From Antechinus flavipes (taxonomy: Eukaryota), in assembly GCF_016432865.1 (NCBI RefSeq), contig NC_067401.1, positions 479,942,001 to 480,006,000 on the forward strand: a DNA stretch of 64,000 bases, given 5' to 3'. Each line of letters opens with the position of its first letter. Positions within the stretch are counted from its first letter, which is position 1. A program made the position numbers and the translations under genes. Shown in pieces: positions 13,501 to 14,867 of the stretch. Below the pieces are notes generated by a model. It had not been told where the DNA came from. It made no database searches and saw only the letters and a program-made list of their open reading frames with translations.

Positions 13501-14867
13501 TCGGTCCTGCTTGGGCCAGGTGCTCCTAAAGGCTTCTCTGGCTCTGAGAGCTGGGTCTCAGTCTCCCTGTCCCCTCCCCTGTCCCTGGGGGACCGCAATT
13601 CTTTCGTGTTTTGGGGAACAGCCCAGGCCAGCTCAGACTTGGAAGGCCTGTCCTCCGATTAGGGCCAGAAGGGCCCAGCCCGGGCTCAGCCAGAACCGTT
13701 CTGTGCCTCCCCCCCAGGGCTTCCTGACAGCCACGGGCAGCCGGGACGCGCGGTCAGCCCAGGCCTTGGAGCACATGTTTGCGCCTGTGATGGATGGGGC
13801 CGTGTCCACGCTGCTGGGCCTGCTCATGCTGGCCGGCTCGGACTTCGACTTTATCGTCAGGTACCGCTGTCCCCAACTCCCCCCGGGCCCCGGGCAACAC
13901 GGGCACCGCGTGGGGCTCCCCAGGTGTGCCCTCTTGTACCAAGACCCCTCTGCCCCTTCCTGCAGGTACTTCTTCGTGGTGCTGACGGTGCTGACGGGCC
14001 TGGGCCTGCTTCACGGGCTTGTTCTGCTTCCTGTGCTGCTGTCCATCGTAGGACCCCCGCCCCAGGTGATTCCCCAGCCCTCCTCGGGGGATCGCTCCCC
14101 CCTCGCCCATACCCACCACAGGGCCCTTGTCCTGAGACCCCCCTCTTACACACACACACACATTATTGCCCCATTCGCTGAGGACATCCTGGCTGGGGGC
14201 CCCCTCTCCCCTTGGCCATGGCCGCTCTAGCCTGTCTCTGCTGCCCCCTCCCTTCTCGGAGATGAGTCAAGAGCAGAAGTAAGCCCGGCCCAGTTCCGCT
14301 CTGAACCCCCAGTTACCGTTTCCTTCCCCAGGTACCGCTGCCAGATGGAGGCGGCCGCCCGCCCTGCCCTGACCCGGTATCGCTGCCCCTCAGTCCTCCT
14401 CACTTCTTCCTGGGCCCGAGCCCAGCCTTCAGGGCTCCTGAGACAGGAGCAGGGGACACCCCAAGCACCTTCATCCTGCCCCCGGCCCACTCCCACATCT
14501 TGGTGGAGGCCAGCAAGGACCCCAGCTTCCCGACCATCACGGTGAGAGGCCTTTGCTGGGGTGACGGGGTGTGGGAGAGGCCCCGGCTGAGGGTCCTTCG
14601 GGGCTCACCTGCCTTCCGTCCCCCCAGGTGGTGCAGACGTACAAGGATGGCTCTCCCGGCCCCGGACTCCCTCCCCTCACGGCCACGGCGGGCAGCGAAG
14701 CCCGCTGGGGGCCCCACGCCAGCCCCGGCGCCTTCACCACCCTGACGGCCTCCGTCACCGTGGCCCTGCACCCGCCGCCACTGCCGGGCAGCTACGTCCA
14801 GGAGGTCCCTGAGGAAACCAGGCCCCCGATGGCCGGCGAGCCCAAGGGACCTGGCCCCCGCTGCTAG
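1387..14867 (+). CDS. PTCH2: Protein patched homolog 2 (Hedgehog receptor), 23 coding exons, ~1252 aa (1182 aa if exon 14332-14541 is skipped)
   Basis: Exons, all GT-AG with consistent phase: 1387-1434, 1632-1809, 6370-6559, 6701-6770, 6884-6975, 7554-7749, 8196-8317, 8456-8603, 8764-8895, 8986-9141, 9233-9325, 9406-9531, 9628-9746, 10020-10368, 10469-10772, 11194-11336, 11600-11780, 11861-12141, 12356-12493, 13718-13860, 13966-14065, 14332-14541, 14628-14867 (3759 nt). Peptides APLWLRA...[21 protein letters not shown] motif [20 protein letters not shown] and HPPPLPGSY match PTCH2. Confidence 0.97.
2199..2207. promoter_or_regulatory. Second GLI binding site in PTCH2 intron 2
   Basis: Exact TGGGTGGTC, within a 19-mer identical to the promoter site (2191-2209 = 1120-1138). 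Confidence 0.7.
4519..4568. repeat. (TG)n microsatellite
   Basis: ~50-bp TG/TA dinucleotide run in PTCH2 intron 2. Confidence 0.95.
5478..5607. repeat. 5 x 26-bp minisatellite GACACAGTGTTGCTGCCGCTGTGCCC
   Basis: Units start at 5478, 5504, 5530, 5556 and 5582; the last unit carries substitutions. Confidence 0.95.
10785..11150 (+). repeat. G-rich minisatellite filling PTCH2 intron 15
   Basis: Reiterated GGGAGAC(C/T)GGG(A/G)GGGGGC units with almost no T on the + strand. Confidence 0.85.
12190..12353 (+). repeat. Polypyrimidine (C/T) low-complexity tract in PTCH2 intron 18
   Basis: ~160 nt of CCT/CCCCT repeats leading into the acceptor at 12354-12355. Confidence 0.85.
14332..14541 (+). CDS. 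PTCH2: Extra in-frame PTCH2 C-terminal-domain exon (70 aa)
   Basis: Acceptor TTTCCTTCCCCAG|, donor ACG|GTGAGA, 210 nt, phase 0/0, no stop. Encodes [70 protein letters not shown]. Confidence 0.85.

What the first reader, a model, noticed from the sequence alone, without database searches (positions are those of the whole stretch)
14332..14541. PTCH2 retains an ancestral PTCH1-like C-terminal exon missing from canonical human PTCH2
Seen: a 210-nt, stop-free, phase-0 exon with strong splice sites lies between the exon ending GPPPQ and the last exon starting VVQTYK. Known (from memory): canonical human PTCH2 joins PPPE directly to VIQMYK, and its short C-terminal domain is a defining difference from PTCH1. 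This exon's ends ([15 protein letters not shown]...; [20 protein letters not shown]|VV) resemble the PTCH1 segment VSPANGLNRLPTPSP...PAHQVIVEATENPVFAHST|VV, including the exon boundary. Inference: this marsupial PTCH2 keeps a 70-aa paralogy-old CTD segment that was lost or silenced on the eutherian line, with possible effects on trafficking or turnover.
Basis: partly seen in the sequence, partly recalled or inferred. Interest (0 to 1): 0.8.

Follow-up and report, generated by a model that had tools for sequence, protein, structure and literature searches.

The report
Marsupial PTCH2 exon 21a, already published
The 210-base stretch is a real, spliced coding exon of the marsupial Hedgehog-receptor gene PTCH2 that placental mammals have lost, but it was already described in 2011 as "exon 21a" of the tammar wallaby; what this check adds is that the exon goes back to fish PTCH2 and matches exon 22 of the sister gene PTCH1.

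Summary
Window 14332-14541 (+) is a 210-nt, stop-free, phase-0 exon flanked by ag|GT and ACG|gt, lying between the TM12 exon (13966-14065) and the last exon (14628-14867) of a PTCH2 orthologue.

An open AG..GT stretch alone proves nothing here: the GC-rich gene span holds 564 such candidates. The exon is real because spliced contigs from two related organisms join 14065|14332 and 14541|14628 exactly, one of them in a 3.8-kb near-full-length mRNA.

It is better conserved than the last exon (0.5-1.9% versus 4.6-4.9% differences). The same exon (82-103 aa) sits at the same place in non-mammalian PTCH2 genes.

Homology to PTCH1 exon 22 holds only through those intermediates. A non-mammalian PTCH2 exon matches PTCH1 at E 3.5e-6 and the window exon at E 5e-7, but the direct comparison with PTCH1 is not significant. 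Exon boundaries coincide in both paralogues. Eutherian PTCH2 proteins skip the exon, and a decayed remnant lies in a eutherian intron 21.

O'Hara et al. 2011 (PMC3293750) cloned this 70-aa "exon 21a" from tammar cDNA and found the human remnant.

New here, but minor: the exon's pre-mammalian origin, and the marsupial loss of the acidic Ser-rich cluster.

The parts
13718..13860 (+). PTCH2 exon 20-equivalent (TM11 region, GFLTATGSR...DFDFIV, last codon split)
   Evidence: Frame and motif positions. The donor joint 13860|13966 is seen in spliced contigs of X1 and X9. tblastn with frog PTCH2 P0015.
13966..14065 (+). PTCH2 exon 21 (TM12; 100 nt; ends GPPPQ)
   Evidence: Joints 13860|13966 and 14065|14332. 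The same 100-nt exon is found in L006 and L002.
14332..14541 (+). The finding: PTCH2 'exon 21a' (210 nt, 70 aa, phase 0/0), membrane-proximal part of the cytoplasmic C-terminal tail
   Evidence: sequence and splice sites; included in spliced contigs of two organisms, no indels in four relatives; profile E 1.5e-8 and 3.1e-8; published tammar cDNA exon 21a.
14464..14541 (+). Most conserved block of the exon (about the last 26-28 codons, [26 protein letters not shown])
   Evidence: 13-19 of 28 residues are identical to fish and tetrapod PTCH2, against 6-10 of 28 to PTCH1. The profile score comes from this block. It has the highest pLDDT of the exon, 71-78.
14628..14867 (+). Last coding exon (starts VVQTYK, stop TAG at 14865-14867), followed by a 3' UTR reaching at least about 15177
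   Evidence: Joint 14541|14628 and contig pieces reaching 14932-15177.
14329..14340 (+). CAG|GTACCGCTG at the exon 21a acceptor, identical to the exon 20 donor 13858-13869
   Evidence: these are the only two copies in the window, against 0.00 expected.

Best explanation
14332-14541 is a genuine coding exon (published name: exon 21a) of a marsupial PTCH2 gene. It is spliced between the TM12 exon and the last exon and adds 70 residues to the start of the cytoplasmic C-terminal tail. It is not a marsupial novelty. It is the ancestral penultimate exon of vertebrate PTCH2, present in fish-like and non-mammalian tetrapod PTCH2 genes, and the paralogue of PTCH1 exon 22. The eutherian form, where exon 21 joins the last exon directly, is the derived state and has left a decaying remnant in intron 21. 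In marsupials the exon is shortened: the central acidic Ser-rich cluster (SDSSDSEY type) is gone, while the proline-rich start and especially the last ~28 residues are kept under purifying selection. Shown here: existence, splicing, orthology, paralogy through intermediates, and conservation. Inferred only: the segment is a disordered tail piece whose conserved end acts as a short docking motif shared with PTCH1. By analogy with the known role of Patched C-tails, it would affect trafficking or turnover of the receptor.
For: Splicing: one search shows contigs of X1 (3817 nt, near full-length mRNA) and X9 (an RNA library) with GT..AG joints 13860|13966, 14065|14332 and 14541|14628. Genomic contigs of X21 and X23 are colinear and have no indel in the exon.

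Selection: one search gives 1-4 differences in 215 nt of the exon, against 14-15 in 306 nt of the last exon and 12 in about 202 nt (plus indels) in an unspliced intronic piece of X9. Of the listed changes, two are synonymous and one (T43A) is a window-specific state.

Orthologues: L006 has a 100-nt TM12 exon, a 249-nt exon and a last exon starting VVKSYK. L008 carries PTCH2-type upstream exons, a 246-nt exon and a last exon starting VLKPYKDSPE. The tree, on 244 columns outside the exon, puts L008 with mammalian PTCH2 (94/99) and the window with eutherian PTCH2 (100/100), with PTCH1 apart (96/95). The C-terminal tree gives a PTCH2 clade at 95/97.

Statistics: the window exon matches P0003 at E 9e-4 in 1.8e9 proteins and at 5e-7 against the window's ORFs. 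The non-mammalian PTCH2 profile gives 1.5e-8. P0003 matches PTCH1 PDB chains end to end at E 3.5e-6.

Boundaries: genomic PTCH1 ORFs diverge between species right before VSPANG and right after ARST, the same places as in the window.

Eutherians: PTCH2 proteins lack the exon. The remnant in L002 is 66% identical in nucleotides, has indels, and its frame closes after about 31 codons.

Literature: tammar cDNA contains the exon. AF2 predicts no secondary structure, with pLDDT 62 overall and 71-78 at the end.
Against: Direct similarity to PTCH1 is not significant: phmmer against the PDB found nothing, the three-sequence profile found nothing, and the mammalian PTCH1 exon and a 23-sequence PTCH1 profile did not hit the window exon. 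Paralogy therefore rests on intermediates and on position.

With the exon's own columns removed, the short C-terminal tree no longer resolves L005 and L006 inside PTCH2 (45/15), though it still keeps them out of the PTCH1 clade. Only L008 is tied to PTCH2 by independent exons.

The runs and the Logan contigs carry no organism names here, so labels such as 'fish-like' or 'non-mammalian tetrapod' are inferred from sequence and gene structure.

Contigs cannot give inclusion levels, and the tammar paper also reports a delta-21a isoform, so the exon may be alternative. No functional data exist for the segment.
Confidence: 0.88

Rival explanations
1. [quoted passage not shown]
For: Direct comparison with PTCH1 gives no significant score. 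The peptide is proline-rich and of low complexity, so chance resemblance is easy.
Against: Homologous exons with the same boundaries occur in PTCH2-type genes that are clearly not mammalian: L006, L001, L008, and the fused form in L005 and L007. Their profile hits the window exon at E 1.5e-8. L008 is PTCH2 by exons outside the segment. Those exons match PTCH1 exon 22 at E 3.5e-6.
Confidence: 0.03
2. The exon is real but a minor cassette exon: most marsupial PTCH2 mRNA skips it, so the main protein is eutherian-like and the exon has little functional weight.
For: O'Hara et al. report a delta-21a isoform and stage-dependent changes in isoform abundance in tammar testis. Contigs cannot measure inclusion.
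Against: In both RNA-derived assemblies the only assembled path includes the exon, and in X1 it lies within a 3.8-kb near-full-length transcript. In the tammar the 1.2-kb band carrying the exon was taken as the full-length transcript. The exon is far better conserved than the last exon between relatives and kept its frame and its 28-residue block from fish to marsupial.
Confidence: 0.08
3. The open stretch is a chance ORF in a GC-rich intron and is not spliced.
For: 564 comparable AG..GT open candidates lie in the gene span, and long open frames occur throughout.
Against: Exact junction use in spliced contigs of two organisms. Cross-vertebrate conservation. Published cDNA.
Confidence: 0.01

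Closest known systems
Tammar wallaby PTCH2 exon 21a (O'Hara et al. 2011, BMC Dev Biol 11:72, PMC3293750; also mentioned in the tammar genome paper PMC3277949)
   Same: 210 bp and 70 aa, in frame, directly after the 12th transmembrane segment and before the last exon. Present in cDNA, absent from annotated eutherian PTCH2, with a remnant in a eutherian intron 21.
   Different: Nothing essential: this is the same exon in this window's marsupial. The tammar residues could not be compared because they are only in a figure. The paper traces the exon to the therian ancestor and says nothing of PTCH1 exon 22 or non-mammalian PTCH2 in the passages read. Here it is traced to fish-like and sauropsid-like PTCH2 and to PTCH1.
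PTCH1 exon 22 segment (VSPANG...ARST, 85 aa; mouse and human PTCH1 chains such as 7k65_A, 6dmb_A)
   Same: Same place after the TM12 exon and same phase-0 boundaries, with the next exon starting VV. Shared proline-rich start (R-x-P-x-P-x-P) and shared end block (H-x-hydrophobic-hydrophobic-V-E-A-x-x-x-P-x-F).
   Different: The marsupial exon is 15 residues shorter and lacks the SDSSDSEY acidic cluster. It shares only 6-10 of its last 28 residues with PTCH1, and direct searches are not significant.
Penultimate exon of non-mammalian PTCH2 (L001, L006, L008; fused to the TM12 exon in L005 and L007)
   Same: Orthologous position and boundaries. 36-48% identity over the whole exon and 13-19 of the last 28 residues identical. 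The last exon begins V-(V/L)-(K/Q)-x-(Y/F)-(K/R) as in mammalian PTCH2.
   Different: These exons are 82-103 aa long and keep the acidic Ser-rich cluster, which is weakened in L008. The fish-like genes have no intron between TM12 and this segment.
Human PTCH2 intron-21 remnant and the delta-22 isoform (as discussed by O'Hara et al. 2011)
   Same: A eutherian remnant of the same exon was found here in L002 (548-757). It is 66% identical in nucleotides, and its frame from the acceptor closes after about 31 codons, much like the reported human stop at codon 35.
   Different: The species of L002 is unknown. No human DNA was examined here, and the link to the delta-22 isoform was not tested.

Membership tests
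Marsupial PTCH2 exon 21a (O'Hara 2011) | 210-nt, 70-codon in-frame exon | tested here: met
Marsupial PTCH2 exon 21a (O'Hara 2011) | Lies directly after the exon encoding TM12 and before the last exon | tested here: met
   junctions.
Marsupial PTCH2 exon 21a (O'Hara 2011) | Included in spliced mRNA | tested here: met
   joints 14065|14332 and 14541|14628 in contigs of X1 and X9.
Marsupial PTCH2 exon 21a (O'Hara 2011) | Absent from eutherian PTCH2 proteins, with a decayed remnant in intron 21 | tested here: met
   P0004-P0009; L002.
Marsupial PTCH2 exon 21a (O'Hara 2011) | Residue-level identity with the published tammar exon | not testable with these tools
   The tammar sequence is only in a figure of PMC3293750.
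Paralogue of PTCH1 exon 22 | Same position and same phase-0 boundaries | tested here: met
   PTCH1 genomic ORFs diverge before VSPANG and after ARST. Window boundaries; alignment.
Paralogue of PTCH1 exon 22 | Significant direct sequence similarity to PTCH1 | tested here: not met
   No hit (E > 10).
Paralogue of PTCH1 exon 22 | Significant similarity through intermediate sequences | tested here: met
   Window exon to P0003: E 9e-4 in 1.8e9 proteins and 5e-7. P0003 to PTCH1 chains: E 3.5e-6, end to end. The joint profile hits the window at 1.5e-5.
Paralogue of PTCH1 exon 22 | Acidic Ser-rich cluster (SDSSDSEY type) | tested here: not met
   absent from the marsupial exon and from the eutherian remnant; present in PTCH1 and non-mammalian PTCH2.
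Vertebrate PTCH2 orthologue (the gene as a whole) | Groups with PTCH2 and not PTCH1 in a tree of exons outside the segment | tested here: met
   the window groups with eutherian PTCH2 at 100/100, with PTCH1 separate at 96/95.
Vertebrate PTCH2 orthologue (the gene as a whole) | Pfam Patched / sterol-sensing domain | tested here: inconclusive
   Single-exon translations gave no Pfam hit. A spliced full-length protein could not be passed to the tools.

The most novel reading that the evidence does not exclude
Marsupial PTCH2 is a natural intermediate in a two-step dismantling of an old Patched tail module. First the acidic Ser-rich cluster was lost on the therian stem, then the whole exon in eutherians. 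The retained ~28-residue block ([19 protein letters not shown]), conserved from fish PTCH2 and recognisable in PTCH1, would be a still-unassigned docking motif, and its loss helped make eutherian PTCH2 the stable, short-tailed receptor.
Probability: 0.3. Interest if true: 0.4.

Novelty: already known. Interest (0 to 1): 0.2.

Why it matters
The short C-terminal tail is a textbook difference between mammalian PTCH2 and PTCH1 and is linked to PTCH2's greater stability. This exon shows that the short tail is a eutherian trait rather than a PTCH2 trait. Marsupials therefore offer a natural construct for asking what the membrane-proximal tail segment does. The core fact has been in print since 2011, so the scan adds confirmation in another marsupial genome, RNA support from two more organisms, and a deeper evolutionary placement. 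It does not add a discovery.

Tried and rejected
1. The 70-aa peptide alone against the PDB and Pfam gave nothing.

2. The exhaustive representative search with the peptide gave only three weak hits. One was a spurious proline-rich repeat protein (P0001). The other two (P0002, P0003) became the useful leads.

3. The word-index search with the exon inside its 146-aa genomic ORF gave nothing. Gene calls on such contigs start at ATG/GTG/TTG and miss the exon.

4. The three-sequence profile A1 against the PDB gave nothing.

5. Full-length named PTCH2 proteins could not be retrieved. The word search accepts only 0.55-1.75 times the query length, and no stop-free reference of sufficient length exists.

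6. Contigs for bullfrog PTCH2 (P0015) and for the second eutherian remnant (P0067) returned no DNA.

7. The link to invertebrate Patched tails is suggestive in the alignment but not significant (domain E 0.09, full E 4.9), so it is not claimed.

8. Kawamura et al. 2008 (two Patched subtypes) is not held. A text search for the PTCH1 peptide motifs found no paper.

9. The C-terminal tree without the exon's columns does not resolve L005 and L006.

Full report
**The observation.** Window 14332-14541 on the + strand is 210 nt and translates without a stop to 70 residues. It is flanked by a pyrimidine-rich tract plus ag on the left and by gtgaga on the right. The exon upstream (13966-14065, 100 nt) encodes the last transmembrane helix and ends GPPPQ. 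The exon downstream starts VVQTYK at 14628 and ends at the TAG at 14865-14867. The description is therefore correct.

The PTCH2 span (about 1700-14870) is so GC-rich that it holds 564 AG..GT, phase-0/0, stop-free candidates of 180-400 nt and open frames of up to 461 codons.

I laid 13300-15300 on two RNA-type runs from two organisms (X1 and X9; X9 is on record as an RNA library) and on two genomic runs from two further organisms (X21, X23).

- Both RNA-type assemblies hold a contig with three consecutive GT..AG joints.
- In X1 the contig is 3817 nt long, with about 3.0 kb of further sequence upstream, so it is a near-full-length mRNA.
- X21 and X23 are colinear with the window and show no indel inside the exon.
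- Only the form that includes the exon was assembled. Contigs cannot give proportions.

**Conservation among close relatives.**

| Region | Differences |
|---|---|
| Exon 21a | 1 (X9) and 4 (X1) in 215 nt |
| Last exon | 15 (X9) and 14 (X1) in 306 nt |
| Unspliced intronic piece of X9 | 12 in about 202 nt, plus indels |

Of the listed changes inside the exon, two are synonymous third-position changes. The third (14458, T43A) is a state peculiar to the window, since all four runs read G there. The exon is thus under stronger constraint than the rest of the tail.

**What the gene is.** A tree on 244 columns from four exons outside the segment puts the window with eutherian PTCH2 (100/100) and puts PTCH1 apart (96/95). 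Eutherian PTCH2 C-termini recovered from the protein collection all join GPPPE directly to V(V/I)Q(M/V)YKE. One of them is named 'patched 2 [Molossus molossus]'.

**Relatives of the exon.** The peptide alone finds nothing in the PDB or Pfam. An exhaustive search of 1.8 billion representatives gave two real hits.

- P0002 is a eutherian genomic read-through ORF that runs from TM12 into a remnant of the exon.
- P0003 is a genomic ORF around an 83-aa exon that looks like both the window exon and PTCH1.

P0003 matches mouse and human PTCH1 chains end to end at E 3.5e-6, at the segment right after TM12. It also picks the window exon out of all 1605 six-frame ORFs of the window at E 5e-7.

A profile search then found 52 genomic ORFs in three groups:
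- tetrapod PTCH1 exon 22 (VSPANG...ARST, 85 aa);
- fish PTCH1;
- a third group (VTPADNGSRLPTPSP...SDSSDSEYYSE...SHIL(V/L)EASKxPSFPK(I/L)T, 82-103 aa).

**The third group is non-mammalian PTCH2.**
- L006 carries a 100-nt TM12 exon, a 249-nt exon with the same ag|GT...ACG|gt boundaries as the window, and a last exon starting VVKSYK.
- L005 and L007 have the TM12 exon and this segment fused in one exon, followed by a last exon starting VVKPF(R/K)E.
- L008, an 8.1-kb GC-rich contig, carries four upstream exons that are 76-91% identical to bullfrog PTCH2. These include the PTCH2-type [22 protein letters not shown] block. They are followed by the TM12 exon, a 246-nt homologous exon and a last exon starting VLKPYKDSPE.
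- In the tree on the exons outside the segment, L008 groups with mammalian PTCH2 at 94/99.
- A tree of the whole C-terminal region gives the order fish-like, tetrapod, marsupial, eutherian inside a PTCH2 clade (95/97). With the exon's own columns removed that clade is no longer resolved (45/15), though PTCH1 still excludes these rows (93/98).

A profile of the non-mammalian PTCH2 exons hits the window exon at E 1.5e-8. A profile of all vertebrate exons without the window hits it at 3.1e-8. The next best ORF scores about 1.

**Paralogy with PTCH1 exon 22.** Direct tests fail. The mammalian PTCH1 exon and a 23-sequence PTCH1 profile do not find the window exon. The case rests on three things:
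- the significant chain from the window exon to non-mammalian PTCH2 to PTCH1;
- identical position and phase, since PTCH1 genomic ORFs of different species diverge just before VSPANG and just after ARST, and the next exon begins VV in both paralogues;
- shared blocks at both ends.

A link to invertebrate Patched tails is visible in the alignment but is not significant, and I do not claim it.

**What is special in the marsupial.** The exon is 12-33 residues shorter than in other PTCH2 genes. The acidic Ser-rich cluster present in PTCH1 and non-mammalian PTCH2 is missing. It is also missing from the eutherian remnant, which has the same ~70-codon layout. The last 28 residues are the best-kept part: 13-19 identical to fish and tetrapod PTCH2, 6-10 identical to PTCH1.

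AlphaFold2 with an 18-row alignment predicts no secondary structure (mean pLDDT 62, pTM 0.15), with the highest confidence (71-78) over the last 20 residues. That picture fits a disordered tail segment ending in a short conserved motif. It shows nothing about function.

**Eutherian remnant.** In L002 the remnant (548-757) lies between the TM12 exon and the last exon. It is 66% identical in nucleotides to the window exon and has several indels. Read in phase from its AG, it stops after about 31 codons. This agrees with the published human case.

**Literature.** O'Hara et al. 2011 (PMC3293750) cloned tammar PTCH2 by PCR and RACE. [quoted passage not shown] They also:
- found a delta-21a isoform;
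- found 70% nucleotide identity in human intron 21, with a stop at codon 35;
- found 81% identity in the opossum;

The tammar genome paper repeats the finding as 'a novel exon' (PMC3277949). In the passages I read, neither mentions PTCH1 exon 22 or non-mammalian PTCH2. Patched C-tails are known to control turnover and localisation, and PTCH2 is reported to be stable (PMC4080449, citing Lu 2006 and Kawamura 2008). The Kawamura paper itself is not held.

**Verdict.** The added points are small refinements: the exon is pre-mammalian, it is orthologous to the penultimate exon of fish and sauropsid-type PTCH2, it is paralogous to PTCH1 exon 22 through intermediates, and it lost the acidic cluster in therians. 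Function remains inferred.

Noticed in passing
window 13858-13869 and 14329-14340: The 12-mer CAGGTACCGCTG occurs exactly twice in the 64-kb window (0.00 expected). One copy spans the exon 20 donor (CAG|gtaccgctg) and the other spans the exon 21a acceptor (cag|GTACCGCTG). The same letters thus serve as a 5' splice site at one place and follow a 3' splice site at the other.
   Followed up: partly
window 10783-11157: G-rich tandem array (periods 19-165 nt, GGGGAGACCGGGAGGGGGC-type units, about 2 copies of a 165-nt unit at 91% identity) inside a PTCH2 intron. It reads as long open GGRGDRGEG-like frames that could be mistaken for coding sequence.
   Followed up: partly
window 14628-14932 against 14332-14541: Between close relatives the last coding exon differs at 4.6-4.9% of positions, about the level of an intronic piece (about 6%), while exon 21a differs at 0.5-1.9%. 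Most of the distal PTCH2 tail seems to evolve almost freely apart from the VT(A)S(V)[11 protein letters not shown] block.
   Followed up: partly
L005:790-1198 and L007:870-1286: In the fish-like PTCH2 contigs the TM12 exon and the exon-21a equivalent form one exon (409 nt in L005). Intron 21 is therefore either a tetrapod gain or a fish loss.
   Followed up: no
P0067 (contig DNA not available) and L002:548-757: Two eutherian remnants of exon 21a differ in state. In L002 the frame from the AG closes after about 31 codons. In P0067 a single ORF runs from EVIRGWQPLPLP through LNFPGFFMGP to NFPTITV, so the remnant may still be open from acceptor to donor in that unnamed eutherian.
   Followed up: partly
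window 16985-17174: A 190-base run of N (assembly gap or masked) lies downstream of PTCH2.
   Followed up: no
P0060, P0064, P0066, P0068-P0070 (fish PTCH1 exon-22 ORFs): Fish PTCH1 keeps the start and the acidic cluster of exon 22, but the HQVIVEATENPVF block is replaced or much changed and the exon runs on to a PP.Y-like motif. The end block is therefore better kept in PTCH2 of fish than in PTCH1 of fish.
   Followed up: no
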